Below, piece after piece: positions 1 to 64,000 of a stretch of DNA of 64,000 bases. Origin of the DNA: Convolutriloba macropyga (taxonomy: Eukaryota); assembly GCF_964194025.1 (NCBI RefSeq), contig NC_134472.1:66464001-66528000 (forward strand), given 5' to 3'. The translations under genes were made by a program, and so were the position numbers. The notes below the pieces were generated by a model. It saw nothing but the letters and a program-made list of their open reading frames with translations. It ran no database searches and had not been told where the DNA came from. Position 1 is the stretch's first letter; each line of letters begins with the position of its first letter.

Positions 1-1958
1 TGCACAATATTTTTTTTCAAGTCTAATTTTCACTTTTTCGGTATTAATTTGAAATTTTAAATCCAAATTTAGTCGATTGCTATTTTTCTGCCGAAATGGC
101 AGTTTTTTTTCTATGAAATGGCAGTTTTTTTCTTTAATATTTTCATCATTTTTATATCACTTCCGACCATGTAAATTTGCCGATGAAGCTCCAATAGGCA
201 TGAAAGTCACCGATACAAAAAAAGATCTATTTAGGAAAAGTAGACACAATTAGTGCAGGAGCTTGCACAAAAAAATTTTCGAAAAATTGCCGATAGAAAT
301 ATGAACAAGTATTAGAATCTGCTTTACTGAAAATTTTCCTGATCTCTGTCAGATGAATTTCTCATATTGTGTAGTGAAATAAATATGAACAACAGTTATC
401 TAATTTTCTTTTTTCATCGCCGACTGAAGTAGCACTGACTCTGCAAGGGAAGTATTTATCGTATCTAGATATTTTTTATGTTACATAAAGACTTATGTTT
501 TAAATTATCAAGACTACCCGAGTTGAAAACAAGAGTTGATTTTCAAAATCTTGCAAGAATTTTTCAAGAATCTTCCAAGACGGTTAGTTCTTGAAAACTT
601 CTGGTAAAAACTTTAAGATTAAAGTTCGTTTTTGACTAAAATAGGATCTGTTGGAAATACACATGAACTTTTTTTTTAAAAAAAAAACATTTTTTATATT
701 TTTCGAACTGTTACAGAAGAAACAAATAACAAAACGACCCAACTTTTTCTTTTTTATCATTGCTCCTTTAGTTAGTTAACTTTAATAAAGATATTTTCAG
801 GCGCATCGGTTATCGCATAAATGAAATTGGAAAATCAATTAATTGTATTAACACAGGACCATGCACAGCAATAACTTCATATAATAGTTTATATAAAAAT
901 GGAATTGCCCAAATGCATGTACACTGAGGTCAATGCAGTTACCCGTGAAAAGTTCACGATGTCAATTTTGACGACCTCTTAAGGATTTATCACAAATACA
1001 AACAAAACTTTGTTTACTAAATTGATATAACTTCGCGATTGAACTGACTGACCCACTAACCTGAACTTGTTGACATTTTCATTTTGTGAATAAAACAAAC
1101 AAAATTTAGAGTTTATTATAACTATGAGCAAAGGTGTTAATAGTTTAAGATACTTGGTGAAATTTACTAATTATGAGGCAATATAACTTTGTATATATAT
1201 CTAGAATTTTTTTGTTGAAGATGTTTATTTCCAAAGATTGAAGCTAATTAGCCAAACAGAATGAAAAGCGGATGTTTTGATGGTGAAATGCTTATTGCTA
1301 TCAGTACGGACTCGTTTACCGGAGCGGAGAAAGAAGGGAATAAAATTGAAAACCAAGGAAAAGGGGGAAATTCTGTTGGGAAAAGAAGGTGCTGTTCCAA
1401 TTGGTCATAAACAATTCACGCTTGCCTGAACTGTTTTCTTTTCCTCAATTTTTTTTTGAATTCACACATTGGAGGCAAAAAATAGAGAAAGCAAATTTTC
1501 AAATATTGCTTTTTTCGGGTCATTTTGTGATAACCAAAAGTAAATAATCTTGTTATGACAAAATAATTACTTGAGACCTGACGTGACATTTCATATTACT
1601 TGATGCGAAAAGTTCAATTTTAGCAAAATAGTAAAATAACTAAGCGTGAAAAAAGACAAAACATGTGACACGTGACAACCTAGTTTGTTCATATTAGCTC
1701 AAATTGAGATACAATGACTGTCAACTCTCGAGAAAACCTTGAACACTCTCAAAACATTATAAAAAACCACAAATGGGCTTTGTATAGATTTGAGATGTCT
1801 GCCTTTTCAATTATAGATTAAATCACGATTGAACAAAGTTGGGTGTATTTGATTTTATCATATAAAGAACAATAAATATACCGGACAATTTCAAAAAAAT
1901 TTTCCGTATTAAAAAGGCATACCACATATTTGTAGCCAGTATTTTAGAACCAGAATGA

Positions 1959-6086: not shown

Positions 6087-6591
6087 ATGCGTGTAAAAGC
6101 GATATTTTCTGCTTTCGTGGTAGTAATCGTTATTGCCGTTGGCATGAATGTTTCATATTATTCATTCAAGTCCAAATTTGGGTTTACTCCAGTTAAAGAT
6201 GTCCCAAAAGAAAGTATGTGCGGGAAAACAATTCAGCTTCAACCCATTCCAGCATCAAATCCAGACGAAAATAATCAGATGTTTTTTGTAGATGCTTCAC
6301 CGACACCAAAATTTAAAGGCTGGAACTGTTTCCTATGCCCCGGGGAAAATAGGACCATAGTTTGGGACTGGAAAATAATCTACGGTCACATTCTACTAGG
6401 AAATAAACATCCCAAGAATTAAACCCGGAGGAAAAAAACCCTCCTTTTACAGTCAAGTGGAGATTCAATTTTTTGGGCTTTTTCCTACATAAATTTGGGT
6501 GTGTTTTCTTTTCCGTTAGGTCTCCGATGTTATTGAAACTTAAAAATATCACACTTAATCATATATAATCACATATAAATATCACCCTATA

Positions 6592-6664
<73 letters not shown>

Positions 6665-9600
6665 GAATATATAAAAAGTTTGTGATTTTTTTCATTCAGT
6701 TAAGCTGACGAAAATTAACTTTTATTCACAGGGGTAAAAGGAAACAGATCCGAAGGTCGAGTTATGTGTGCGTTTGAGTCAGCTATAGTTCTTGGAAAAC
6801 TTCCCGTGAAAGTTATCGTGATAGCGAAAAATTTTACAATCGATCATCCAGCACTTTGTTCCTTGTTTGATAAGTTCTACCCAGAAAAGCTTAATTTTTA
6901 TTCCGTGGATTTTGACGAACTTTTCAGGGGAACCTCTTTGGAGGGAATTAAGGCTGATAGAAGGCAATCGAAGCCAGTGTTTACTAATATGAGTGATATG
7001 ATGCGAGCAGCGATACTTTATAAGTACGGTGGATTTTATTTCGATCAAGATGTAGTCACTCTCAATGACCTCAGAGGACTCCGTAACATCCTTGTCATGG
7101 ACAACATCCTTACGTAAGATATATCCATTTTGTAACTAAATCTTTTCACTTTATGAGTCTTAAAAGCAAATCAGCGGAAAGACTGCAATGCGAGAACCAT
7201 GCAACATCTGATCAGACACATTCAAACTCTGAACAGTCGTATTCAAACTCTGAACAGTCATATTCAAACTCTGAACAGTCATATTCAAACTCTGAACAGT
7301 CATATTCAAACTCTGAACAGTCATATTCAAACTCTGAACAGTCATATTCAAACTCTGAACAGTCATATTCAAACTCTGAACAGTCATATTCAAACTCTGA
7401 ACAGTCATATTCAAACTCTGAACAGTCATATTCAACCGGAGACCAAACATATATAAACTCTGATCCAGACATGTTCGTCAGACGTGTTGATGATAACTGG
7501 TCTGACAAATCTCAACTCTGACCAGACCCATGACCCTCAACCTTTATCAGACTTGTTCAATCTCTGTGAGACTTTTCATGTGGCAAAAAATCTTGGAATA
7601 ATTTGCGAGACAGTGGACTGATCTAACATAGGGTTAAAGGTCATTGTGCTCAAGGCACAGCGAACAAGTTTCTAGTAAACTAAATTCAGTGATATAAAGT
7701 CATATTCAGTCTCCCTTTAGCCGAGAATTACTGCTTTACACGTTTATTTGGCGGGAACATTCCCAATTTTGACGGGAAAATTTTCAAGTTTTATAATAAT
7801 TCGGGAAGAGTGAACCCATATTATAAATTAAAAAGGTGCAAATGATGTAACAGGCAAACCAGGGGGTAGCTCACAATGCCTAGAACAACTTTCCGAGAAA
7901 AAAAAACAGGCAAATAAAGGCTGAAGAGCAAGGTTTTTACCTTGAAAACTCGTACAGATCAAGTTTTCCAGGCAAATTGTCCAAAGTTTGTCCCAATTCC
8001 ATATCCCGGGTGGTATGAGCATCCACACCGGGTCCTTGACTTTCAACGAATTGCACTGTTTAGGGCAATTCTTTCGATTTGTCATGGTAGGATGATGCTA
8101 CTCCTTAACCAGAGGTTTTCAGATGTGGTTTACAAGCTGCTGTACATCACAACGTGAAGGAAGCTGGATGCTGGCATGTTTGAGGAAAAGTCACCTGTTA
8201 GCAGTGAACTGTAGGGTTTTTGTACCAGAAACTGTTTGGGTTAATTTTTTCTTCATTGTCTGGTACTTCGTTATCTGGTTCATTGTTAGCTACATGCGGA
8301 AGCATGCTTTGTGTTGATACAGAGAGAATAAACGCTGTTTATCATTCTAGGCTCAAGAATGACGCAATTGACGTTTTCTAAATAAGACTGGTAGAGATCA
8401 GAGCCAAATTAACTTCAGAGCCAAAAGGAGTGACAGCAATCCGTCGGCTCTTGTTGTTAATGACGCCGTCTGGAACCTGAATGATATGAGTCCTCGTCAT
8501 GTTTGGCCTCTGGAGCCTTTGTTAGGGGTGTATCCTGGAATAAATTGACCACAATGTGTGGTGAAGGTTAAAATGAAAAACGGTACGTCTGTTCGTCAGG
8601 TTTCCGAACTCGCATGCGTTCTGGCTGATTAAATCCTTCTTCCAATTTTTTCGGAACTGTTTCTTGGGTTACCCGCACTTCGACTATCTCTTCAAACAAC
8701 TTTCAGGTGTGTTTTGGAGCCTTCTCTTCCTGGAGCATGTTGCCATTAAAGTCGCAACATCAAGAAGCGTGAGAAGTTACTGCATTAAAAATTTTACTAA
8801 TAACCTCGAAAAGGTAAATCGGTTGCCCGCAAACATGCATTTTCACTTTATGAGTCTTAAATGTAGTCATCAGAAGATTTTAACAAAAATTTCTGCTGAC
8901 TAACATAAAAATCTGACCAAAATATTTGTTTTGCTTTATATACAGAACAAATAATTGTAATACAAAATATGCGCTAAATGCATAGATTTCATGTTTCTAG
9001 AGAGGTAGTTTCAGTGATTCAATCATGTTTGGTCTCTCTTAGTGGAGATTCACCGCTTTTCACGTTTACTTGGACAATGCCAAGTTTCTGTCTCTGGGAA
9101 GAGTTTCAATTAATTAAAAAAAGGCATCGGTCATCTGCAACTGATTCATCATCAACAGTCATGATAATGATCACCCATTGAAAACAATTTTATCTGTCGA
9201 TACTTAATTTAAAAGTTTTGATGAATGTAAAATTGAAGCTCTTTTTCTTATACTAAACTGCGTGCTTTTGAGTTTGCCGCCTCAGTTTTTTTACAGCAAT
9301 TTTTACAATTTAATGAAGAATGAAAAAACTACGAGAACATCTTTGAAACGATCAGTCAAGATCGATCTAATTAACACAAAATGTAAACCTTGTCGACATA
9401 TGTTTCAAGTATTTGGCATATTTTGACATTCATAGTCTTTGTGACTGAATATAATTCAGTCGATTTTTTTCTTTTGCCTCCGTTTCTGTAGAAATTTCAT
9501 ATCGAACTGAAAACATAATCTGTTGACTGAAAATAGGTATCTCGTAAAGAACTTTATTCACTTTTTTTTCCAATTTTTGACGACTTTACGAGAAAGTGCT

Positions 9601-18912: not shown

Positions 18913-21100
18913 TGTTCCGACCCACTTTAGCGGGGGGGGACTATATACTCAAATGGTTTTTTTGTTCAGTCAATTCTGGCCGATCGATATATTCACCGTA
19001 GAGAGTTGTGAAAAGAATCATTGAAAAGCCCGACCAGCGTAGAATACATAACAAAAAAAAATTTTGTGAATTTTGAGTTATCGAGGCTCAAAGTTTTCTG
19101 AACATATGACTAATTTTTGTTGTTTTGTTCACATTTTACTTATTTTTGCGCAATTTTTCTAAATTAGCTCAAAAAATGCCAAAATTGTTAACGGTAGTCT
19201 TAACGACACCTCTAAAGATGGAAGAGTGTTGCTGAACTGTTTGATCTAATTTTTTAATCAAAATTTTTGCTAAATTTTACAATATTCAGAATTTTTTCGT
19301 CAAAAATGGCATGAAATAAGCTTCTTCGATCCATTGTTTAAACTTGCCGGAATAACAAACCTAAAACCTACTGACACAATCTTCGTTAACTTCACAAAAG
19401 TCTAGTTCACTTGCACTTCCTTTGGGTGCTCTTGAATTAAAAATTGGCCTGTTTTTTTACCAATTTAACTCGATAATTATCCAAAATGCAAATTATTTTT
19501 GATATAGTGCCTTTTTTCGGTCAAGTTATCCATATCCATAAGTGTTCTTAACAGAAAAAGGTCAATCGCAAAACTAATTTTGCACTAACTGTTGTTTTTA
19601 ATGCCCACAAACAATTCGGATTGAAATCAGCCGCTGTCATTTTAAAAAATATTCCTTCACTTATTGCTTTTATGATAATTACAATAAAGAACAATTCAAG
19701 TCAAGGAGTTCTAATGATAGGTCCAATTGGTTTCCTAAGGAGTTGCAAAAATACGTTTCTAGTTTTTCAGTTCAAAGCTTGTCGTTTTGACTTTGAAAAC
19801 ACTTGTTTTCAAAAAGAACAACAGATTATTGAGCTTTGCCATTTTTTTTCTTTTCTTGTCGGTAAACTTGTAGATTGCGTTCAAGTCAGCAAGGCAAGAC
19901 AGGTCGCATTGTCTTTATAATGAATTGGATTTTTACATTTATTGCTAATTTAGATTTTGAGAATTGGTTTTTCGGCTTTGATACTAAGAGCTTTCACAAA
20001 TAATTTTCCACTTCTGGCTTTTTTGCAGCTCCAAGATTCTTTTTCTTGACTGGTCACTCTATTGACAGTTCAGACTTCACATTACTCTCGTTTGTTTGAA
20101 AAGAAGGCTCATCTGGACGTATCGCTTTTTAGTGCAATGATTATGGTTTCAACGGCTTCGACACCGTCTTCCAGCAGAATTTTAATGGAATCATTTTTTT
20201 GTCTTTTTGTAGTCGTATGAAAAAACGTATGAAAGAAGCCTATTTAATGATTTTAGTTGATAGCTAAAATTTTTCATGACTTTGAAGTTAACTGTTTTTT
20301 AAGCATATTTTTTAAAATTGCATTTTGCTGTTCTTTTTTGTCTACTTTTTACCTAATTGCCACCAATTCTATACCAAATCTTAATTTTTGAATAATGAGA
20401 TTTTAATGGCTTTCTTTGAAATAAATGAACCTGTTTAAAGATTTCTATTGATAACAAATGTTTATATGAATTTGAAAAAAAGAATACAAATATACTGCTA
20501 ACTTTGCCCTTTGTGTTCCTTTATGTCATGTTACCTAATCTCATAATTCAGGGATCACATAACAGATTATAGGTATTCAAAATTAAGTTTCAAACTAATT
20601 GGTTGTTTTTCAATTGCATTTACCGTTTGTTTCTGTGGACGTACATCATTTGGGATAATAACATGTCTCAAGGTTTTCATATGGAGATATAAACATACTT
20701 TATCACTGTGCCGTCTTTGGTTTTTTGATTACTTGCTACCGAGTGTCATTAGGGACTGGTCCCATGTTTCTTCTAAAGTACAATGTGATTTGCCTAATTT
20801 AGGTTTTATTTGGCGCTATTTTGACTTTTTTATTAAGTTTTTTCTTGTTCAGAAAAGACAATGAGTTTTGGATGTAAATATTGTTTGTTGTTAATTGATT
20901 TTGTCAATTGGCAGTTCTCAACGTCCCCCTAATGTCGCATTATCAACTTTGCTAAATGATTTGAGCTTCAATCAATTTTTTATTCATACAAAATTATTTC
21001 TGTACAATAAATCTCTTCCTGATTTTGTAGACAATTAAGACCAAAATGTGGATGAGAGGGATTGGAACATTATGTGCGAAACCACGTTGCCGATTTTTCC
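18913..21100 (+). mobile_element. Helentron-like family A, copy 2
   Basis: Starts TGTTCCGACCC, then a G-tract and ACTATATACTCAAATG...GGCCGATCGATATATTCA, shared with 30661. Ends near GGGATTGGAACA-TTATGTGCGAAACCAC. Confidence 0.6.
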
Positions 21101-21967
21101 ATTTTTTTCTTCGATGTCACATGTAGAACAGAAATTACCAATCACTCAAAAACTAAACCGATTCAACTTTCTTAGAGAAGAGTATGCTGAGCACAGGTCA
21201 TGTGTAAGTCCCAGGGGCCGGTGAGGCATGGCCATGGTCTCTACGTATTATTATTGGTTTGAACTTATCTCGCGCTTGTTTTCTTGCTTTTATAGATAAT
21301 GGAATTTGAAATATCGCTATTAAGTGTATTGGTTCAAAAATTCTATCACTCACTTCAGTAAAAGTGATCAGGTTGCTGCTGAAAACTAACAATTAAAAAT
21401 CATTTTAAAAATGAGAATCGTAAAATTGTCAAAGCGATAAATCACTTCGCTGTCTTATAGTCAAAACTCAGTTCTCCAATTGTTCTCCATTTGATAAAAG
21501 ATCCAAAATTAGCCAGTCAAAACTAAATTTAGGGACCTAAAACATATTCAGGTTTCAAATAAATTATATTAGCGGAGCGTTTTCTATAATGGAGCGATAT
21601 AAAAACTATAGTTTCTATAGGGCAGTTTTATGAGCCCAGGCGAAAAGTTAATACCAAATACCGTCCACGTCATTTTAATCATGTCTTGCATTGATTCAAA
21701 TGAAAACTATCTTTAAAGGCATAAGACCGTTTGTAGAGCAGGATTTCAGATTAAATATGAGGTATTCAGTTAAAATTCTTTTCCTAAAAATGTAGAGCTT
21801 CAATTAATCAGTTTCCAGTTTTATCACTTTTGATTAAACAAATATTTCACCGAAAACACTATATTAATTCAAATGCTTTTCATTGACAATATCGTGCGGT
21901 TAGCAAAAAAGCGGTTTTTAGGTAATATATCAAACGTTTGGATAAAGCGCGATTGAATTATTTTAGT

Positions 21968-24372
21968 ACAAGGAGGCTCGTTAATGTGCGTTCTCAATTG
22001 ATGTTCCGACCCGAGCTCATCTACATTTTTGACCCAATTGTCAACCAATTGAGGAGATAACCAAAAATAGATGTTTGAGTTAAAAAAATTGTTACACAAC
22101 GAAACAACTAATTGAATTAATTAATTTCCATTAAAAAGACAACGAAAAACCAAATGAACAACAAAATAAGCAAAAACAAAAATTTCACGGCAAAAACTCA
22201 AAATCTAAAACTAAAAGCAGTAACAACAACGCATATTGTCCAAAAAACAAAACATCAGTACAAAACATAATATCAATAGAAACATAATAACAATCAATAA
22301 ACAATCTCAATAAACATGTTAATTTTTGATTTACAGGGAATTGGATGGGACCTCTCAATGATGTGAATAAGTTACTTGTTGACGAAAAGAACATAACTGA
22401 AAATCTTCGGAAACGAATATTATCACTAACTTCAAGATCATTCACTAAAAACTGACGGAATTGAGTAAAACCATTCATTCAATCCTCAATTAGAAACTGA
22501 TGAGACATGGCAGCATTTTACGGCTACATAAAGAAAAAAAACAACGAATTTACAAAACATAATAGCGAGAAGTGTCGAAGCCATTAAAAATGAGCTTTTC
22601 AGTAGAAGATTTACAAGCTTTAACCAATCTTTTAACAGCAATAGGATTCTTCTTTTGCAACAATATGACTTCAAAATATCAGAAATATTTACATATATAT
22701 TAGACACGAAATTTTTTAGAAAACCCGTAGTATCAACGCCACTAATTTCAATAACTTTCAACGGAAGTCAAAAATGCGCTAACTTATGCCTGGATGCGAA
22801 GACAAAGATGTTTGTCAATCAAATAGAGTCAGAATGGCATCACAATAAGTCCTATGACTCTGAAAACATCAAAAATACAGGCGAAAAAAAGAAAATCAGA
22901 AGAAAAGTGTAAGAAAGTGTTGAAGCCATTTAAACAATAAGTTTCTACACGAAAACTTTAAATATGATCCAATGAACGTCTTCCCTAAGCCAATTAGAAC
23001 TATCAATGTTACGGTAATGTGATAAGATTTCGAAAGGAACCAGAATCACGAAAAAATTATTCAAAATTTAAAAAAAAACTCGTGGTATTGAAGTAATAAA
23101 ACTAATAGTTAGAAAATAAAACAGCTAACGAGATTAATTATGGTTGCAGTAGAAAACAAGGTGTCCTGTCATTACAGAGACTGGCTTAAAAATCACAAAA
23201 TTAGGTTGAAGATCAGTTATTTTTCAAAAAAATATTCGAAAATTTATTTTTAAAATCTTAACAGCCATTAAGCTCAATAGCTTTCAACGGAAATCATAAA
23301 ATAAGCAAAGCTACGCCTTGATGGGAAATTAAGTATATTTTTCATTCATAAGTCATCAAGAATACATCACAAAAACTCATACGACTATAAAAACAACAAA
23401 TGAAGGCAAAAACAAAAAATTCAGTAAAAAAGTAAGAGAAGAATGTGTCGAAGCCATTTAAACACTAAATTTTTCTCATGAAAATTTATCTAGGATCCAT
23501 TTAACGTCTTCTCAAAAACAATGGAAACTATCACTTTTAGGATAACGTGAAAAGATTTCAAAAGGAACCTAAATAAGGAAAAAAAATATTCAAAAATTTT
23601 TAAAAATATGAAAACTCTTGGCATCAAAGACATAAAACTAACACTAAAAAAAACAATAAACTAGTTTAAGTTTGATTGCATTAGGAAGAAGTGGTTTCTG
23701 TCATTACTGACACTGACTTACAGTTCACGAAAAAAGTTCAAGACCGGTTAATGTTCAAAAAATTATTTTTAAGACTTAACAGCCATTAGTTGTCCACTCA
23801 AAGCACTAGATAGGTTCACTTAAAGCTGAATAGGAAGGCTATTGCACTTTAAGTCAACGATTCTTTGTCACAGTACTACAAAAATTTAGTAAAATCTCAA
23901 AAAGTGACTAACAAAAAATGAAAGTTTTCTAAAAAAACATCTCACAAATTGAATTCGAATTTATTTGATGGTAAACTTCCCTATAAGACCAGAACTAGCC
24001 TTTTCATCGCCTTTCGTCTATTGGCAACACAAAATTGTTTAATTTTGTAGCGTGACATGTAATTTTGAATTAATATTTTTTTTGGAAAAAAAATCTTAAC
24101 TTGAACACAAATTACGCTAAAAGTGAATAAAATCATGGCAAATATCCCGTGTCCACACAAATGTTTACACCTAGATAACTCCTCGAAAACAACGAAATTC
24201 AAAAAAAAACTTCTTTTTAATTCTGCATTCTAGGCTGGACGAGCTTTTTAATGATGCCACTGACATTTCTCTACGATGAATATATCAATCGGCCAAAAAT
24301 TGTCTGAACAAAAAAAACCATTTGAATATATAGTTCCTCCCACCCCCACACAAGTGGGGTCGGAACAAAAAT
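21968..24372 (-). mobile_element. Helentron-like family A, copy 3
   Basis: GGGGTCGGAACA at 24356-24367, internal inverted copy TGTTCCGACCCG at 22002-22013, terminal ACAAGGAGGC at 21968 (reverse complement of GCCTCCTTGT). Confidence 0.6.
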
Positions 24373-25574
24373 AATAGCTGCAAAACGTTCAAGTCTCAAA
24401 CTTCCTTAATTCCTTGCAAAAATTTTGATAGAACCTGACTTAAAGATTGTCATTGCTATTTTTATATAAATTATGCACAATAATAAGGAAAATTAACACA
24501 ATAGTGAACAAATTAGGGCTTTATTTTGACCTTTTGTGGCGTTGACAGCCATAAATCGTTAATTCTAAACAAACTGAAAAAAATTAACCGAAAATTGAGA
24601 AAAAACCCAGAGACAATTCGATTCCTGCTGCTAACAAATTGACACGCAAAAAGGAAATAAAATATTTTAACCCTTATCAGTGAAGGCAGAAGTCTTTTGG
24701 CGTGCCAATTGCTAGTGACGGCTTGTTTCAAATTTTTATTGTAAGTATAATTTTAGTTACTATATCATTCAGAATGAACACTTAATTTATGTGTAGGTCT
24801 TCAAATAGGACCGCTTGTGTTCTCCCAGCGTAATCGACGCTTCCAGATATTCAGAAACAGGCTTTCTTAAGTTGATTGAGATAACACCACAGTTTTTGTG
24901 AATCTTTAAGAACAACAGTTCTTATGAATCACTAAATTGTTTCGGTTTTCTAGAGTAAAAAACTTTCCTCTTTCATCAACAGCCCAAATATTATAGAAAA
25001 ATTTGAATACAATTTGAAAAAAATTTGTATTCGAGACATTATTTATATCTTCATGTGCACAACAAACATTCTTTGGCAGGCATTTGATAAACAGTTTTTA
25101 AAAGCATTTAATGCTAAGAAACGTATTAAAAATCAATCAAATAGTTTTCAAAAATCATCATTAAAAACAAATTACGTCCCATTACTGAGGATCACTTTAT
25201 GTCAATTGATCTGAATTATTAGTTTCCAAACTGTGAAATAATTCAGATAATTAGAATTGAAAGAATCCATACATAATTATATAATTTGCAAATCAAAATT
25301 TGAAAATCTTTACAAATCTTTAAAAATTATTGCTAAACAAATCATCAGTTAATTCAAATTTTTTACTTCTAAGAATGTATATTATTATTTATTAAAACAC
25401 AACCAATAAGTGATAAAATTTCATTAAAAAAATATGCACTATGCAAAATTTTATAAAAGTTTTAGTTTTATTAATAATTTCTTATGGCTCTGCTAGGGTA
25501 TATTGCTGAAAAAATAAAATTTAGGAAAATTAATTGATGAAAACGGATGGTCACAAATAGACGGCATTGACATA

Positions 25575-28500
25575 TTAATTATGTTCACTTTGTTCAATTG
25601 TTAGCGCTTCGCATCCATTTTTAGGTTCACCCCATGGTTGAATTTCACCAGAACCCAGTAACGTATAAAATACTCCACCAAGCACTGAACTGACTCCAAT
25701 AAAGTAGAAACAATGTAACCATAACTCGCTACTGTGAATGTTCTCTTTCGTAAACCCGTCTATAACTAAAGGCATAAACATTGCAACTAAAGCTGCAATT
25801 GTGGCCCCTACAGATTGAATAGTTCCTGCAAAATATGGTGCAATATCGAGACAACTGCAAAATCCACCTGCGTACAAGAAACCAAAGAAAAACGAAGCGG
25901 TTGATATGAGACCAAATGCTAATTTAGACTGGCACTCGGCATATCCGGCTAGTATTAGGAAAACTGCGGTAAAGACCGAACAAATAATTTGATTGATTTT
26001 CCGAATAGCTGTTTTTGGAACACTTTCCTTCTCATGTGATCAATATTATTTTCAAAACAAAACAGTTGCACCCTCTAATGCTGATAACTTTATTAGCTAC
26101 GAAGTACGCCAGTGATATAAAACAGAAACATTTGCAAAAGAATATATAACCTAAGATTACTGCAATGTCCTAATATTCACCAGATTTCAGAGGCTTTGAG
26201 ATTTCAAATTAACTTGAAAGATACCACAAGTCTTTCGCTAGTAAACGTCCATCAAAATTAAAAACAGCCTGAATAAAAATTTTAAATCAAAACAGTATGA
26301 ACGCAAGTCCAGTTTACGAGGGAGGTTTTTCAAATTCATTTGCAGTATTCCTGTTTCGAGGGCTGTTTCGAGCTGAGGGATGTCACGAAAACTTATCCAA
26401 TTCCATTTTATCCAATGCCATTATACCCAACCTGCCATTTTGCCCAATACCAACTTTAATTTACCCTTTTGTCAAAATTACCGGAACGAGAATTTAGCCG
26501 ACTATATATTATGGAACTATCACAACCGAACATGGGATTATATTGCCCACTTAAGTATGCTTAAACAACCTGGTAATAGCGACTGCTCATTTGTAATAAT
26601 TGAATAAAACTATCAGAGCATTGGGTAAAATCGCATTCGCTCAAATAGAATTGTTTAAATTGTCATCTAACCCAGCTGAGGGATTTCAGCAAATCGAGCT
26701 GCATGATTACCTATTCAGTTGAAGGATTTCCGGAGAGATGTAATTTTGCTGAAAAATTCTTTCATTTCTTTTGGGTTGCATGGTTTCATTTTTAGTAAAT
26801 TTGAAAGTTTTTTCCACCAACAACTTCAAGGTATCTAAGCAAAGTTCTTTCGAAAATTTAACAGCAATCTTCACTGAAAAAATTATTTCAATAATCCAAA
26901 ATCATATTCAAGATCCTTTGTAGCCTGAATTCCGAAAAAATAACTTTCCTAATACTGTTGAACTGCGTTAACGCAACACAATTCCAAAATTTGCTAACAA
27001 AATTCCACAATATTAAAATCCACAACAAGTGGCAATAAATGCCTCGGTTTAGTAGCTAATTACACAATTAATTGCACTGAATGGTCGTCAAATTAAACCG
27101 TCGCTAACACTGGTTATTAATAGCCGCAAAGCGATAGCTGAGGCTAATATTGGCCTTCTCCTGGTTTTTTAATTTCGTCGTCAAGATTTTTGTTAAGACC
27201 ATATGACGTCACAAACACTTCAAATCTGCAATTTGTTCATTCGTTCACGCAGTTTTAACTGAATTGCGTGCGTGACGTCATTTTTCACTCTTAGTGGAAC
27301 GAGTTTTTTTGTTCATTTTCGTGAAAGTTTTTGGTGACATCTGGCTTACTTCACTCTCAAAAATGACCTCCACACTCTGAAATTGATTTTTCCTTACTTC
27401 AATTCAAAGAGATAAGGTCAAGTGAGTGTGTGTCACTCTAATTGCAGATCATTTAAGAGCATCTAAAAGAAACAGAAAAACATTATGCAGATTCTTAATC
27501 AAAACATAACATCTCATCCTTTAATGAAAAGAATAATTTATTGGTCTGTCTTTTTTTACTATCTTTTTGAGACTGCAGATCTACGCAACTATCGGGGCTA
27601 TTTTCTGGCAATCTGCCAGCTATGTTTTCAAAATTTTAAGCTGACGGAATTTTCGCCAATCATTTTTTTAAAAGTAGGTCGGTAATTTTGATTAAAGAAA
27701 GGAAGTGCGTTAAGGTCAAAACCGCAATTCAAGCTACGGGCGTTGTAGACTGGATTTCATTATGCTTAGATTTTCTAATTTTGCGAAATTCGGTTACTAA
27801 TTTTCCTAAACAGCCCAGATTTTTAATTTAACCCAATTCTTAAAATTAACCCAATTAACCCAATTTAACCCGTAATTAAGTTACACTCTTAAAATTTGAT
27901 AGGTAAATTTTGACCAATTCAGGTCTGCCTTTGCGGAGTAATGCCTGATTTTCCTACACACAAGGCCAGATTTAAAAACTTGCAAAGTACATGTTCGGAG
28001 TACGGTTGCTTGACTTCTGCTAAAATCACTTCAAAATTCTGAATTAAATCTGAAACAACAACGCGGTTCTCGACGAATGTCCGATTTCCTCAGTGATTTC
28101 ATTAGAGTCACATAAAATACGCAACTTGAAACACTATGAATTAAATTATAAGGTTTTACCATGGGGAAAAGGAAACGGTTCCCTGTAGTTGATATAACTT
28201 TCCGCTCTCGTATTCGGTCAGTGACATAAGCAGGGAATATTGAACCCAACATATTGCAAAACCAGAGAAAAGCGCATAAATAGCCATCTAAGTCGGTGTC
28301 AAAATTCAATACATTCGAGAAATATAAAGGTAATCCTGTCAGCAGAGCGTAATCAACTACATGCAAAGAAATTAGAAGAATTACAAACGCGTGAAATGGA
28401 GGACTTTTTAACATTTCTTTCCAAGGAATATTGGATTGAACTTGGTCCTTTATTTGAGAGGATGCAAGTATGTATTCACGCTCACTTGTCGAAATCCTCG

Positions 28501-29790
28501 GATGACACTCGGGCGAATCTGCCGACGTATAATTCCATACAAAAAACCAAATAACTCCAAAGATTCCATTCATTAGGAACCCTAATGGCCACCCACCCAG
28601 GAAATCAAGAGTACACAGCAATCCTGCGCTCGAGTAGCAGAAAATTAGACCAAACGAGCATCCAGAAAGCGAGAGCCCATAAAATAATGTTCGTTCCATT
28701 TCGGGCGACCACCGGGCTGTTAGGTGACTAAATGCTGGGATAGTTATACCCTCAAACATACCCTCAATAACACGCAAGGTTATTAACCATGGCACCCCCA
28801 AATAGGCAAAAGGGGGGTTCAAAATAGACAAAAAGCTCTTGATTAGAACAGAGTAGCCCATTATGTTTTTGCCTCCATATTTGGACGCAAGATATCCAGC
28901 AGGTAATTGTGTGATAACGTAACCGTAAAAATGGGCAGCAAGAATGTTAGCTTGTTGGGTTGTGGTCCAGTTAAATGTTCCTCCGGTCAAACTGGCCTTT
29001 TGAGAAGGAATCTGTTACAAATTTTCCCTATCCCAATTGGACTATATTATTCTTGCAAGATGTACGCCCGGATCTTGGAAAATAAACGTTATCTTGCAAG
29101 ATAGGCGTTAAACGCAAGATAACTGCTAGATTTCCACTGGGGCCATGCTTTTATAATTAAAACTCTTAAAAATATTAATATAATCTTGTAAGGTTCTACA
29201 GACCTAGATCATGGATGAGCCTAGATCATGGATAGGGCGTTATATTTTATAATTTGAACGTATGAGTTGAAAATCAAGTAAAAACATTCAGCACTTTCAG
29301 CTCATATTTTATGTATGTTTTAGACCTCTCGAAAGCCCCCTTTCTTACCCGAAATGTCGCGCCTTTATAGTGATATTTTCTATAGATTTTAAAATTTGAG
29401 AAAGTCACTTTAAAATTCTGACTTACATCTCTAGCGGCTACAAAGTTTTCGTCGAATTTCTGATTATATCAGTGAACTCATTCGTGTCACGTGACCTATA
29501 CGTGAAAGTTTGTTGGACGTGAAAATCGGAACAGATCCCTGAGAAGTTTCAGACACTGGACAATTTTCGTCGTATGAGCCGTCTTTGGTCCCCTGATCGT
29601 AAACCATCTCCACAATTGCAATACTCATAATCACACGCATCGAAAACAAAGTCCCAAAGCCCAGAAACCCGAGAAGGGCAATTTTTAACCTCGTAGAACA
29701 CAATTTTTCACAGGTTGTCTCATGATAGTTATAATCGTCATTTCGGAGCATTAAGTTGTCCAGTTCAGAAGAATCACCAGCAACAGTCAT
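25575..29790 (-). CDS. SLC17-family MFS anion transporter (sialin/VGLUT-like), 3 exons: 29790-29539, 28996-28183, 26008-25575 (499 aa)
   Basis: Motifs STRLKIALLGFLG...RVIMSIAIVEM, FNW, FYGYVITQLPAGYLASKYGGK, LRVIEGMFEGITIPA...WSPEMER, GGWP, DSPECHPRISTSEREYI, IPWKEMLKS, STTAIRK, LDIAPYFAG and GSGEIQPW. The joined CDS is 1500 nt and open if both introns are read as GG-AG. Confidence 0.88.
26009..28182 (-). other. Non-canonical (GG-AG) intron bounded by terminal inverted repeats, SLC17 intron 2
   Basis: Minus strand: ACAG|GGAACCGTTTCCTTTTCCCCATGG ... CATGAGAAGGAAAGTGTTCCAAAAACAG|CT. Removal gives IRERKVISTTAIRKINQ, collinear with the SLC17/VGLUT motif LRSRRIMSTTNVRKLMN (from memory). Confidence 0.7.
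27114..27635 (+). mobile_element. Helentron-like family B, internally deleted copy (inside SLC17 intron 2)
   Basis: 5' TTATTAATAGCCGCAAAGCGATAGCTG; 3' GGGGCTATTTTT + hairpin CTGGCAATCTGCCAG (27605-27619). Matches the reverse complement of both ends of 60211-61143. Confidence 0.65.
28997..29538 (-). other. Non-canonical (GG-AG) intron bounded by terminal inverted repeats, SLC17 intron 1
   Basis: Minus strand: TCTCAG|GGATCTGTTCCGATTTTCACGTCCAA ... TTGGGATAGGGAAAATTTGTAACAGATTCCTTCTCAAAAG|GCC. The phase-0 join gives CPVSETSQ|ASLTGGTFNW. It lies in a variable loop, so the boundaries rest on the shared motif rather than on protein homology. Confidence 0.55.
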
Positions 29791-31483
29791 TTTTTGAGGT
29801 TCTCGAATAATGCTATAATTGTGGAAGGCTGTCGTTGGGAAGCAAACTAAGCCTAGAGTAACTGAGGTCGAGTTTTTTGTCCCAAAACCCAAAAATACTT
29901 TTACTTAATCACCGTTCGTTTTTAGTTTTGTTATCACTATACTTTTACTATCAGTATATTTTTATCATCAAAGAAAAATGGAGAAAAAGGAGAGGAAACG
30001 TAAATGCGCATGAACAAAAAATACAGTAGAAATTTTCCAGACTAGAATAACCTCGCATGATAGTAAAATCAGAGCTTTACTCCAATCGAAAGATCAGAAC
30101 ATTCTAGAAAATTTTCAACAAGATCACTACCAAATGTTAAGTAATTTTCAAATATATATTACGAACAAAACTACCGTTGAACATATACCTCATGTGCTCA
30201 CGTCGCAAAAGCCAACTTACTTCTTTTCGTTCATAACAAGCTTTAAAACCAGCGCCAAAGTTTAATTCGCAAACACTGAACTCGAAGAATCATTTTTTGC
30301 AATTAAATTGCTGATTACTCATGAATTATTTACTCCCTGGCTATGTAGTCATATATACGTGCTTTGGCATGCAAAAATTAGTGTACCTTAAGAAGTTCAA
30401 AGAGAATTATGTTCGTAAGATAACAAAAATTAATATCACAGTATTTTCGTAGACTGATACAACACGGTTAGATATTTCTCTTCGCTATTTCAACCTGTAA
30501 ATGCATATCTGATGTTGACTCTTTCAAATCTTCTTTGTATTGGAGTGGACTCACCACCCCGACTTGACCGATTTCCCTTTTAGTGGAGAGACACAAAAGC
30601 CAACTTATTCTTTTTGCTGAGCTTTTTGGCTTCCTTGCCAATTTGCTTCCTATCTTTATTTGTTCCGACCCCTCTTGAGGGGGGAGGAACTATATACTCA
30701 AATGAGTTTTTTTTGTTCAGACAATTTTGGCCGATCGATATATTCATCGTAGAGAGTTGAGACTGGCATCATTAGAAAGCTGTCCAGCGCAGAAGATGGA
30801 ATTAAAAAGATTTTTCTGATTTTCGTTTTTTACAGGGAGTTATCGAGGTTTAAACTTTTGAGCAAATAGAGTGAACTTTTTTAAAGAAAGTGTTGTTGAT
30901 TTCATTTTAAAGACAAAAATATTGCCGGCTATTTTTATTTAATTTTTTTTGTCAAAAACTCTGACTAAATATTTCAAAATTCAGACTTTTCCATCAAAAA
31001 CAGCACGAAATAAGTTTCTTTAGTCCACTCTGATAAAATTTGCAGGAAGTGCACACCCAAACACCACTAACACAATCTTTTTAGACTTAAAAGGGGGCTA
31101 ATTCCACTTCAACTTCCGTTGGGAGTGCTCTGTAAATAAAACTTTGCCGTTTTTTGCTAACTTTATTCGTTGATTATCAAAAACTCAGCATTTATTTTTG
31201 ATTTTTTTACCTAACAAAATATCTATATCTATATCGTTCGAAAAATTAAGTGTTCTTCAAGGACGAACAGCATTAGCAGAGCTAGTTTTGGACCAAACTT
31301 GGACTGTTACAATCCAAAATTAATTCGGGTTGTGATTAGTCGATCTTTTTATTGAAATCGATCTTTTTTTTATATAAATAACTATATATATAATAATAAC
31401 TATAAATAAACATACATAAACAACTTTTTATATATAACAATTAAACCACAGAACATTTCAAATCAAAGCTCACTAGTGATAGG

Positions 31484-60210: not shown

Positions 60211-61143
60211 AAATTTGAGAACATAGCTGGCAGATTGCGAGAAAATAGCCGCAATAGATTCGTAGATCGGCAGTCTCAGAAAAAACAGTAAAAAACACAG
60301 ACCAAAAAAATTTGTCTTTAAGGCTGATCTGTTATATTTTGATTAAAAATCTGTATAAGTTATTGCTGCCTCTATTAGCTGATCTCAAATAACCTTCATT
60401 TAGAGTAACACACACCCATTTGACCTTATCTCTTTGAATTAAAATAAATAAAAGTCAATTTCAAAGTGAGGAAGTCATTTTTGAGAGTGAGGTAAGTCAA
60501 GTGTGACCGAAAATTTAATCACGCGAATGAGCAAAAAAAAAACTCGCTCCACTAAGAGCGAAAAATAACGTCACGCATGCAATTCAGTTGAAATTACATG
60601 AACGAATGAACAAAAAGTGGCCGTGACGTCATATGGTCGTAACAAAAATCATGACGACGAAATAAAAAACATAGCAGGACAAGTCCTGACGTACAATTCA
60701 AAGAATTTTCATTGACTAAACAGAAAATTAGACCTAGAACGGACAATGAATGGATTGGGAAAACAATTTAGAAAAAAAATCCAATCCAAAAACTCGAAAA
60801 AACAGTAAAAATCAAAATGAAATTGCCGCATGTGAACAAAAAACCACTAGCGAGAAAGCGAATTTTTGTTCAAACACTGTTTTCTCACTCTACTTTAGAT
60901 TTAGAGCGAAAAAATTCACGCCGCAAAATCACTCGTTTTTTCGCTCCACTTCCTGTTTCGGCGTGACCAAAATCACTACTCCAATTTGACTTCAAAAATC
61001 ATGAAAATGTGTTAACAGATCTTAAAAAAAAGACAGCACCCCAATATAATTCAAATTCTTTGAATTGCAAAAATTCTTTGAATTGTAAAAAACCAAGAGA
61101 AGGCCAATAATAGCCCCAGCTATCGCTGTGCGGCTATTAATAA
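60211..61143 (-). mobile_element. Helentron-like family B, longest copy
   Basis: On +, the ends are ACATAGCTGGCAGATTGCGAGAAAATAGCCGC and GCTATCGCTGTGCGGCTATTAATAA, matching the ends of 27114-27635 in reverse complement. Confidence 0.65.
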
Positions 61144-62567: not shown

Positions 62568-62611
62568 AACTTCTGCAATTATAGAATAATTAGTAAATAT
62601 GCAAACTGATT

Positions 62612-63417
62612 AGAATTTGGAACAAAGCAGGAAGGTTGCCAGAAACTAACCACGACAGCTTTGCAGATCTGCAGTTTCATAAAGATAGTAAAAGAAACAT
62701 ACAAAAAATTTTTATCAAATGTTGAGATGGTATAAACATTGCTGCTTCAAATGGCTGCACTCGAATAACTTTCAATTAGAGTGACGAACTCAAGTGACCG
62801 TGTCTTGGAATTAAATTAAAGAAGAGTCGCCCTCAGAGTAAGGAAGTCATTTTTGAGAGTGATTTAAGTCACACGTACGATCAAAAACACATTCACGTGA
62901 AAAAAAGATGTCCCGCACGCAATTCAGTTGAAATTGCATAAAGATTGAACAGAAAAGATATGACGTGATTGTGACGCCATATGGCTGTACAAAAACAACA
63001 AAAATCAAGACCTAGAATGGACTATGAATCAATTGTGACAATCAATTAGAAAACAATCAGATTAGAAAATCGAAAACACTGTAAAAATCGATGTCCAGGT
63101 ACCGCATGTGAAAAACAAGTAGCGGGAAAACAAATTTCTGTTCAAACTCCAATTTTTCACTACTTTAATATAATAGCGAAAAAATTTCGCGTCCCAAGAT
63201 TGCTTGCTTTTTCGCTTCACTTCCTGCTTCGGCGTGAACAAAGTCATCAGCTAAATTTGACTTACAAAATGAAAATGTAAAGACAGAGCCCCAACAGCTA
63301 AATTTGACTTACAACATGAAAATGTAAAGACAGAGCCCCAACACAGTTCAAATTCTTTGATTTGCAAAAAAAACAAAAGAAGGTCAATAATAGGCTATCG
63401 CTTTGCAGCTATTAAAA
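62612..63417 (-). mobile_element. Helentron-like family B, diverged copy directly upstream of COQ2
   Basis: Collinear with 60211-61143; ends GGCTATCGCTTTGCAGCTATTAAA. Confidence 0.6.
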
Positions 63418-64000
63418 ACATTCAATAAAGCAAGGCAGGTAGCCGGATAAAAGATTGAAAACAGAAAACTTGGGCAAATAGATAGAAAATTTCTCTATTC
63501 TCATTGGCTGAAATTAAGCGTTATTTGCAAGCTGCAAGAAAAATATAGCATCTAGTCATCTCTCGCGAGCCATGGCCATATCTTAGCAGCCTGTGGGACT
63601 TGATATGAATCCATCACAACCGAAGAAAATATCAAGACCGAATGTTATGCGCTGTAATATAAGTCAGCGCTTAAGTCTCCTGACCAATATGCCATTTGAG
63701 TAATATAATTTTCGATCGTTTGCCCAAATTTTTGCTTTGGATCTGTTGCCTTTCGATCTATTGTCCTAGCACCAGCAATGCACTGCTCAATAGTTTCAAA
63801 TCAACTTCCAACTTTGGTATGCTGCGGCAGCTTTGGGCAACCTTTTCATTAATATTTCTGAAGAAAATGAACTTATGATGAGGACAATTTTCCTTTTTCA
63901 TTTTTTTAAAATTGTCCTTTGTGACATTAACGCCTTTAGGAACTATTACAAAATGGAATTTTATTAACTTAAATGCTAAGTATTTCAGTGCTCTACGAAA

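What the first reader, a model, noticed from the sequence alone, without database searches (positions are those of the whole stretch)
26009..28182. GG-AG intron whose boundaries are pinned by a conserved protein motif
This is the best single test case. Of the joins I examined, only ACA G|CT restores the SLC17 STT.[VI]RK motif (ISTTAIRK) at family spacing. The in-phase GT alternatives either delete STT or add about 14 residues. ACAG is repeated at both junctions like a target-site duplication, and its second copy supplies the acceptor AG. There is no polypyrimidine tract before the AG (the region is purine-rich), so ordinary 3' splice-site signals are also missing. The intron has since gained a Helentron-like insert (27114-27635), yet its terminal stem persists.
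Basis: partly seen in the sequence, partly recalled or inferred. Interest (0 to 1): 0.75.

Follow-up and report, generated by a model that had tools for sequence, protein, structure and literature searches.

The report
Transposon-born GG-AG intron, acoel transporter gene
A 2.2-kb jumping-gene insertion splits a formerly intron-less sialin-like transporter gene of the acoel worm Convolutriloba macropyga; it is probably cut out of the RNA as an intron that starts with GG instead of GT, but no RNA data could be reached to show the cut.

Summary
The sequence facts hold. On the minus strand, a sialin-like (SLC17) gene is interrupted at 28182-26009. The interrupting piece starts with GG and ends with AG, and ACAG stands at both junctions. 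Its ends pair (-23 kcal/mol, top 0.1-0.2% of background), its 3' end is purine-rich, and it carries a very high-copy nested repeat.

It is a transposon insertion. It has an 8-bp target duplication (AACTACAG/AAAAACAG) and inverted ends of a family (GGAWCTGTTTCCTTTTCCCC). The same family bounds intron 1 of this gene, a GC-AG intron at 6319-6755 and a GT-AG intron in a paralog. Three RefSeq paralogs have single-exon coding sequences, and five paralogs read straight through this site.

Between two haplotypes, the exons, exon C included, differ 4.5 times less than the introns. So the gene is probably alive and the insert is probably spliced out.

The conserved motif pins only the insertion site, not the splice site. 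RefSeq XP_075247158.1 uses the GT at 28159 and skips exon C. No RNA run holds this gene.

I give the exact GG-AG cut about 0.5. The scan has already noted such introns elsewhere in this genome, two reportedly with RNA support. This is another member of a known kind, not the best test case.

The parts
29539..29790 (-). Exon A of the sialin-like gene (ATG at 29790-29788; ends ...ACT TCT CAG)
   Evidence: ORF and tblastn. Identical to the N-terminus of RefSeq XP_075247158.1.
29000..29538 (-). Intron 1, an insertion of the same kind. It has an 8-bp duplication, CTTCTCAG (29546-29539) and CTTCTCAA (29007-29000), and inverted ends GGATCTGTTCC.. / ..AACAGATTCC. Exact removal is GG..AA in this haplotype and GG..AG in L001; an in-frame AG lies 3 nt further on at 28998-28997. 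RefSeq instead uses GT 29490 .. AG 29012.
   Evidence: end duplex -20.9 kcal/mol, 0.5% of background. Paralog P0002 and the three RefSeq paralogs read straight through here.
28183..28999 (-). Exon B (TM2-TM8 region; ends ...RERKVISTT + G)
   Evidence: Pfam MFS_1 at 2.6e-33. Sialin at 8e-51. 99.4% identical between haplotypes.
26009..28182 (-). The finding: a 2174-nt insertion, proposed as a GG..AG intron (phase 1)
28183..28190 (-). 5' copy of the 8-bp target-site duplication (AACTACAG); its last G is the exon's last base
   Evidence: Sequence. The uninterrupted paralog L005 has ACAACAG only once at this site.
26009..26016 (-). 3' copy of the target-site duplication (AAAAACAG, 6 of 8 identical); it supplies the acceptor CAG
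   Evidence: Sequence.
28163..28182 (-). 5' terminal inverted repeat GGAACCGTTTCCTTTTCCCC, with 0 mismatches to the family consensus
   Evidence: Identical in the first 20 of 21 nt to the 3' end (reverse complement) of L003 intron a.
26017..26035 (-). 3' terminal inverted repeat (decayed); it pairs with the 5' end and contains three cryptic AGs (G at 26031, 26028, 26023)
27114..27635 (.). Nested, very high-copy non-autonomous repeat (ends 27114 and 27628-27635)
   Evidence: Depth and loose ends. Other copies at window 60211-61143 and 62610-63419 and in L001.
26324..26631 (.). Second nested, moderately repeated segment
   Evidence: Depth about 10^3 times the flanks. 44-nt inverted repeat at 26387-26430 / 26621-26664.
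25578..26008 (-). Exon C (TM9-TM12 and stop at 25580-25578)
   Evidence: Sialin at 3.6e-15. 3 substitutions in 377 nt between haplotypes, against 4.9% in the introns, p = 5e-5.
28158..28159 (-). Rival canonical donor (CATG|GTAAAA), used by the RefSeq model
28175..28176 (-).
21471..21536 (-). 22-codon terminal exon of the RefSeq model; it has no similarity to the transporter family

Best explanation
A DNA transposon with inverted ends (family consensus GGAWCTGTTTCCTTTTCCCC, 8-bp target duplication) landed in the once intron-less coding sequence of a sialin-like SLC17 gene of Convolutriloba macropyga. It landed inside the conserved loop between TM8 and TM9.

The gene survived because the insert plus one copy of the duplication is removed from the pre-mRNA as a phase-1 intron. 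The duplication ends in CAG. Its 5' copy, followed by the element's first bases, therefore makes CAG|GGAACC, which matches the usual donor CAG|GTAAGT except at position +2 and at +5/+6. Its 3' copy makes the acceptor CAG|CT.

The paired ends bring the two sites together and bury three cryptic AGs, so the CAG after the helix is the first free AG.

Shown: the insertion origin, the shared element family, the empty sites in paralogs, the end pairing, and the constraint on the exons.

Inferred: that the piece is spliced at all, that the cut is exactly GG..AG, and any role of the stem.
For: - Organism and gene. RefSeq XP_075247158.1, 'sialin-like [Convolutriloba macropyga]', matches the window's exons A and B over their length.
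- Insertion. There is an 8-bp duplication and inverted ends.
- Element family. The same end sequence bounds window 6322/6751 (a GC-AG intron), L003 intron a (a GT-AG intron) and, more decayed, intron 1 of this gene. Shuffled copies of the window gave no matches to it.
- Empty site. Three RefSeq paralogs have a single-exon CDS. All five paralogs examined (these three plus P0002 and P0007) are uninterrupted at this site.
- The gene is alive. All three exons keep open frames. Exons show 16 differences in 1463 nt between haplotypes, introns 87 in 1780 (p = 1e-10). Exon C alone gives p = 5e-5.
- Pattern across the family. In all four elements the exon ends AG, the intron starts G, and an AG sits at the matching place in the 3' duplication: ACAG|GG, TCAG|GG, GAAG|GT, AAAG|GC. 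Where the duplication happens to contain AGGT or AGGC, the whole element is removed by GT-AG or GC-AG sites lying outside the inverted ends.
- A second non-GT case. The intron in paralog L002 has GA-AG as its only in-frame solution.
- Divergence of the rival-route segments. The pieces that the canonical routes would keep as coding differ between haplotypes like introns do: 4 in 107 nt, p = 0.03 against the exon rate.
- End pairing is in the top 0.1-0.5% of background for both introns of this gene.
- Leads only. Earlier scan notes report RNA-verified GG-AG hairpin introns in this genome, one of which RefSeq also misses.
Against: - There is no RNA evidence for this gene. The only runs that hold it are DNA. 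No transcript-derived protein covers either exon.
- RefSeq's model uses the stronger canonical donor at 28159 and skips exon C.
- Three GT-AG routes stay in frame.
- dN/dS between haplotypes is about 0.5, from 10 non-synonymous and 6 synonymous changes, which is not clearly below 1.
- One haplotype has a 1-bp insertion that trims the last 15 residues.
- The GG donor lies inside the helix.
- Intron 1's matching AG is mutated to AA in the window's haplotype.
- The stem may be no more than inheritance from the transposon.
Confidence: 0.5

Rival explanations
1. The insert is spliced, but at canonical GT-AG sites inside or next to the inverted ends. One route is GT 28159 to AG 26031 or 26028, which keeps 13-14 extra residues (GNRFLFPM + (K)ESVPKT). 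Another is GT 28176 to AG 26009 (+2 residues, ISTTGNPIRK). A third is GT 28198, which replaces VISTT. The transporter tolerates the altered TM8-TM9 loop.
For: - All these routes are in frame and free of stops.
- CATG|GTAAAA is the best match to a standard donor nearby, and RefSeq chose it.
- A T-rich tract and a possible branch site lie upstream of the 26031/26028 AGs.
- The first 46 nt of the intron are identical between the two haplotypes.
Against: - All eight relatives compared have no gap in this loop motif.
- The AGs at 26031/26028 are GAG and AAG, and they lie inside the helix.
- AACC|GTTTCC matches the donor consensus only at GT.
- Other members of the family are removed whole, by sites outside their inverted ends.
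- The would-be coding pieces diverge like introns (weak).
- This route would not explain why both duplications in this gene end in CAG.
Confidence: 0.22
2. The copy is a dying or dead paralog. Two transposon insertions broke it and exon C is no longer joined to exon B. What is transcribed ends early or runs on to the 21536 exon, as in the RefSeq model.
For: - There are at least seven paralogs, so one could be lost.
- No RNA run holds the gene.
- The RefSeq product is truncated.
- dN/dS is about 0.5, with 5 non-synonymous against 1 synonymous change in exon A.
- One haplotype has a frameshift near the 3' end.
Against: - All three exons are open.
- The exons are 4.5 times less diverged than the introns; exon C on its own gives p = 5e-5.
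- The insertion is old enough to carry two nested repeats and decayed ends, yet exon C's 143 codons are intact in both haplotypes apart from the tail.
Confidence: 0.2
3. The piece is removed by something other than the ordinary spliceosome. Candidates are a hairpin-guided RNA cut and ligation, as proposed for euglenid nonconventional introns, or exact excision from somatic DNA.
For: The piece has inverted ends plus a direct repeat, non-GT borders and no pyrimidine tract. This is the same outline as euglenid nonconventional introns (PMC11282704).
Against: - DNA contigs of four runs cross both junctions at the depth of the flanks, and no listed joint removes the piece.
- The borders keep G at +1 and AG at the end, with a CAG| exon context, which is what a U2-type spliceosome with a relaxed +2 position would use.
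- The euglenid +4..+6 / -8..-6 pairing rule is not met.
- Members of the same element family have plain GT-AG and GC-AG borders.
Confidence: 0.04

Closest known systems
Introners / MITE-derived introns (Micromonas, Aureococcus, dinoflagellates; reviewed in PMC11282704; PMC9860276; PMC12130899)
   Same: A short DNA transposon with inverted ends and a target duplication lands in an exon. One or both splice sites come from the duplication, and the same element family bounds introns at unrelated positions.
   Different: - Only the ~20-nt ends are shared between copies here; the interiors do not align.
- The intron ends are single-copy at read depth.
- The donor is GG.
- The host is an acoel. Neither introner paper I searched mentions acoels.
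GV-AG introns (GA, GC or GG donors) of the larvacean Oikopleura dioica and other tunicates (PMC13326754). From my own recall, also the copepod Eurytemora affinis (Robertson 2017); I did not read that paper here.
   Same: G at +1, any base at +2, and a normal AG acceptor. These introns are presumably removed by the U2-type spliceosome.
   Different: - The lineage is different.
- Here the non-GT donor is the first two bases of a transposon end.
- The intron ends pair, which is not described for those introns in the text I read.
Fritillaria borealis AG/AC and AG/AT introns derived from MITEs (PMC13326754; Henriet 2019, cited there)
   Same: Non-canonical introns born from MITEs. Because of the ACAG repeat, this intron can also be written as AG..AC.
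   Different: The rule of a YAY triplet at the intron's last three bases is not met (AAC here). Intron 1 and the L002 intron do not fit either. The G[N]..AG reading with a CAG| exon end fits all of them.
Euglenid nonconventional introns (PMC11282704, PMC12501133)
   Same: Non-GT borders, no pyrimidine tract, ends paired by inverted repeats, duplication-like repeats at the junctions.
   Different: The euglenid consensus positions are not present. G..AG is kept here. The host is an animal. The removal mechanism here is untested.

Membership tests
Transposon-derived (introner-like) intron | Terminal inverted repeats at the ends of the intervening piece | tested here: met
   28182-28166 pairs with 26033-26017, 15 of 17. 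The duplex is -23.1 kcal/mol, matched by 0.12% of 5000 background pairs.
Transposon-derived (introner-like) intron | Target-site duplication flanking the element | tested here: met
   AACTACAG / AAAAACAG, 6 of 8, with the last four exact. Paralog L005 has ACAACAG only once at this site.
Transposon-derived (introner-like) intron | Related copies at unrelated intron positions in the same genome | tested here: met
   The ~20-nt end is shared with window 6322/6751, L003 intron a and intron 1 of this gene. Shuffled windows gave 0 hits. The interiors are not similar.
Transposon-derived (introner-like) intron | Empty site in relatives | tested here: met
   Five same-genome paralogs are uninterrupted at this site. 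Three RefSeq paralogs have a single-exon CDS. No ortholog from another species was available.
Transposon-derived (introner-like) intron | Removed from the mRNA | not testable with these tools
   The only runs holding the stretch are DNA. No transcript-derived protein was found.
U2-type GV-AG non-canonical intron | G at +1, AG at the end, and a junction shown in cDNA | tested here: inconclusive
   The sequence fits (CAG|GGAACC ... AACAG|CT). No cDNA was available, and in-frame GT alternatives exist.
U12-type (minor) intron | 5' consensus RTATCCTT and branch site TCCTTAAC near the 3' end | tested here: not met
   The intron starts GGAACCGT, and no TCCTTAAC occurs in the last 60 nt.
Fritillaria-type AG/AC intron | YAY triplet before the 5' site and as the last three bases of the intron | tested here: not met
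   In the AG..AC reading the upstream triplet is TAC (fits), but the intron's last three bases are AAC (does not fit). The rule is from PMC13326754.
Euglenid nonconventional intron | Pairing of +4..+6 (CAG) with -8..-6 (CTG) | tested here: not met
   +4..+6 is ACC and -8..-6 is AAA. The rule is from PMC11282704.
Helentron-type non-autonomous element (the nested insert) | Family termini and insertion into T-rich sites, or similarity to a known Helentron | tested here: inconclusive
   The insert has subterminal inverted repeats, a hairpin near one end and T-rich flanks. No transposon library was on hand.

The most novel reading that the evidence does not exclude
Acoels may have a second working class of spliceosomal introns, in which a helix inherited from transposon ends is part of the splicing signal. 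It would juxtapose the sites, hide cryptic AGs, and so allow GG, GA or GC donors and acceptors without a pyrimidine tract. The same element family would then give GT-AG, GC-AG or GG-AG introns, depending only on the 8 bases it duplicated on landing.
Probability: 0.25. Interest if true: 0.8.

Novelty: new member of a known kind. Interest (0 to 1): 0.5.

Why it matters
If the cut is confirmed, this locus shows two things.

First, it shows intron birth in an animal gene family that was intron-less. Two elements of one transposon family sit in the same gene, and uninterrupted paralogs serve as before-insertion controls.

Second, one element family would give GT-AG, GC-AG and GG-AG introns according to its target duplication. 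That would tie the relaxed donor use seen in this acoel genome directly to transposon-driven intron gain.

I found no paper on this for acoels.

Tried and rejected
- RNA evidence. The look-up of sequencing runs (kind rna) returned only four DNA-like runs. Read laying showed contigs running unbroken across both junctions.
- Transcript-derived proteins. Three word searches gave only genomic ORF calls, the RefSeq model and paralogs. The queries were exon B, exon B within its longer ORF to admit full-length proteins, and exon C. The exon C search found nothing.
- Fritillaria-type AG..AC reading: rejected on the YAY rule.
- U12-type and euglenid consensus: not met.
- RNA genes inside the intron: an Rfam scan of 20000-31000 found nothing at E <= 0.1.
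- Similarity of intron interiors between family members: only the 21-nt end matches.
- Compensatory change in the stem between haplotypes. One A>G keeps a pair as G.U and one U>G adds a pair in L001. These are too few to count, and the window's haplotype looks like the decayed state.
- dN/dS between haplotypes has too few changes to decide.
- I did not look up my own spliced protein by exact sequence, because that would have meant typing a long sequence.

Full report
**What is there.** The window is AT-rich animal DNA.

On the minus strand lies a three-exon gene of the SLC17 / sialin family:
- Exon A runs from the ATG at 29790 to 29539.
- Exon B runs from about 28999 to 28183. It scores Pfam MFS_1 2.6e-33 and human sialin 8e-51.
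- Exon C runs from 26008 to the stop at 25578. It scores sialin 3.6e-15.

RefSeq XP_075247158.1, 'sialin-like [Convolutriloba macropyga]', belongs to the same 90% cluster. It matches the window's exons A and B over their length. So the organism is the acoel C. macropyga. Earlier scan notes had suggested this, and I could check it this way.

**The observation.**
- Exon B ends ...ATA TCA ACT ACA G and exon C begins CT ATT CGG AAA.
- The 2174 nt between them (28182..26009) start GG and end AG.
- ACAG stands at both junctions.
- The join gives ISTTAIRK. Residue for residue, without a gap, this matches sialin (FSTLCVRR) and VGLUT2. It also matches five paralogs of the same genome.
- The last 30 nt before the AG are 30% pyrimidine.
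- The ends pair over 17 positions, 15 of them paired. The duplex is -23.1 kcal/mol, -25.0 in the other haplotype. Only 0.12-0.2% of random pairs of window segments do as well.
- Bases 27114-27628 are a very abundant repeat, with about 10^4 times the depth of the flanks, sharp loose ends and other copies in the window.
- A second, less abundant repeat lies at 26324-26631.

**What it is: a transposon insertion.** Four lines of evidence agree.
- Target duplication. The ACAG repeat is the exact part of an 8-bp duplication, AACTACAG / AAAAACAG, that directly flanks the inverted ends.
- Shared end sequence. The 5' end, GGAACCGTTTCCTTTTCCCC, is not private to this intron. It also forms one end of a 2.9-kb GT-AG intron in a paralog (L003 intron a, 20 of 21 identical). 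In decayed form it forms both ends of intron 1 of this same gene, which has its own clean 8-bp duplication, CTTCTCAG / CTTCTCAA. Shuffled windows give no such matches. The interiors of the elements do not align.
- Ancestral state. Three RefSeq paralogs (508, 516 and 511 aa) are encoded by single uninterrupted exons. The closest of them has ACAACAG only once at this site. The family was therefore intron-less, and every intron I found in it is an insertion: two in the window gene, one in L002 and two in L003. Five of the six have paired ends in the top 1% of background.
- Presence in both haplotypes. The insert, with both nested repeats, is also present in a second haplotype about 93% identical (L001, from ENA assembly ERZ25071359). 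It is not a recent event.

**Is the gene alive?** All three exons are open.

Between the two haplotypes:
- The exons show 16 substitutions in 1463 nt. The non-repeat intron parts show 87 in 1780 (p = 1.3e-10).
- Exon C alone has 3 in 377 (p = 5e-5).

A copy dead since the insertion should not show this, so I take the gene as probably functional. Exon C must then be joined in frame to exon B.

There are caveats:
- The split is 10 non-synonymous to 6 synonymous, so dN/dS is about 0.5 and not decisive.
- L001 has a 1-bp insertion that trims the last 15 residues.
- No RNA run holds the gene.

Exact removal of any insertion plus one copy of its duplication restores the old protein. The motif therefore marks the landing site, not the splice site.

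A full enumeration gives several in-frame, stop-free routes:

| Donor | Acceptor (last intron base) | Result |
|---|---|---|
| GG 28182 | AG 26009 | 0 extra residues |
| GT 28159 | AG 26031 or 26028 | +14 or +13 |
| GT 28198 | AG 26031 or 26028 | replaces VISTT (+2 or +1) |

The RefSeq model uses GT 28159, but then jumps to an unrelated 22-codon exon at 21536-21471. It drops exon C and with it the last four membrane helices. That looks like a pipeline working around a non-allowed donor.

Arguments for the GG-AG cut:
- CAG|GGAACC matches the standard donor at six of nine positions. AACC|GTTTCC matches only at GT.
- In all four elements of the family the exon ends AG, the intron starts G, and an AG stands at the same place in the 3' duplication. 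Where the duplication happens to hold AGGT or AGGC, the whole element is bounded by ordinary GT-AG or GC-AG sites outside the inverted ends. Both insertions in this gene have duplications ending in CAG. That is expected if survival required an AG|G junction. It is not required by the canonical routes.
- The L002 paralog's intron has GA-AG as its only in-frame solution.
- The pieces that the canonical routes would keep as coding differ between haplotypes at the intron rate (4 in 107, p = 0.03 against the exon rate).
- The three cryptic AGs lie inside the helix. The CAG at 26011-26009 is the first AG after it.
- Earlier scan notes report RNA-verified GG-AG hairpin introns in INTS4 and an HSP70 gene of this genome, the latter also missed by RefSeq. 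I could not check these and use them only as priors.

Arguments against:
- GTAAAA at 28159 is the better conventional donor.
- The GG sits in the helix.
- There is no RNA for this gene.

I put the exact GG-AG cut at about 0.5, a canonical in-frame cut at about 0.22, and a dead or exon-C-skipping copy at about 0.2. Removal from DNA is unlikely, because contigs of four DNA runs cross both junctions at flank depth.

**The stem.** It is real, but it descends from the transposon's inverted ends. The 5' arm equals the family consensus. The 3' arm has decayed, more so in the window's haplotype than in L001. Whether it acts in splicing, by bringing the sites together and masking AGs, is inference.

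**Compared with what is known.**
- Transposon-born introns whose duplication supplies splice sites are established in algae and dinoflagellates, and are proposed widely (PMC11282704, PMC9860276, PMC12130899).
- GV-AG donors are known in larvacean tunicates (PMC13326754).
- MITE-derived non-canonical introns are known in Fritillaria, whose YAY rule this intron fails.
- U12 and euglenid signatures are absent.
- I found no paper describing such introns in acoels.
- The scan has already noted the same class several times in this genome.

This locus is therefore a further member. Its added points are two insertions in one formerly intron-less gene, and a shared end sequence linking GT-AG, GC-AG and GG-AG introns. 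As a 'best test case' it is weak, because expression is unproven and canonical alternatives exist.

Noticed in passing
window 1383-1446 (+): A 3'-type end and a 5'-type end of the same GGAWCTGTTTCC family face each other, 28 nt apart. This could be two abutting elements around a tiny piece, or one collapsed element.
   Followed up: no
Its ends pair at -31.5 kcal/mol, matched by 0 of 5000 background pairs.
   Followed up: partly
window 21471-21536 (-) and 28159: RefSeq XP_075247158.1 joins the GT at 28159 to an unrelated 22-codon exon 6.6 kb downstream. It omits the conserved exon C, giving a transporter without its last four helices.
   Followed up: partly
L002:7256-9814: The single intron of paralog P0002 has GA-AG as its only in-frame solution (CCAG|GAAAG ... 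TGCAG|GAATT). It has a CAGGAA direct repeat and a different inverted end (GATTTTGTTAAC); its end pairing is not significant.
   Followed up: partly
L003:6150-7951: The last exon of this paralog is tandemly duplicated together with about 60 nt upstream. The first copy (6211-6834) ends early and the second (7112-7951) is complete. This could be a partial duplication or alternative exons.
   Followed up: no
L003:5692-6211: A GT-AG intron whose ends are a third kind of inverted repeat (GTCACAATGAAACGAAACTTG / CAAGTTTTGTTTCACTGAG). Its end duplex is -23.4 kcal/mol.
   Followed up: no
L001:~9358 (window ~25626): The second haplotype carries a 1-bp insertion that puts a stop 15 codons before the normal end of the transporter.
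   Followed up: partly
window 26324-26631: A second nested repeat inside the intron, at about 10^3 times flank depth, lying next to a 44-nt inverted repeat (26387-26430 / 26621-26664).
   Followed up: no
L002:1-46: A 1207-residue DNA_pol_B_2 gene (Polinton/Maverick-type polymerase) lies next to the paralog.
   Followed up: no
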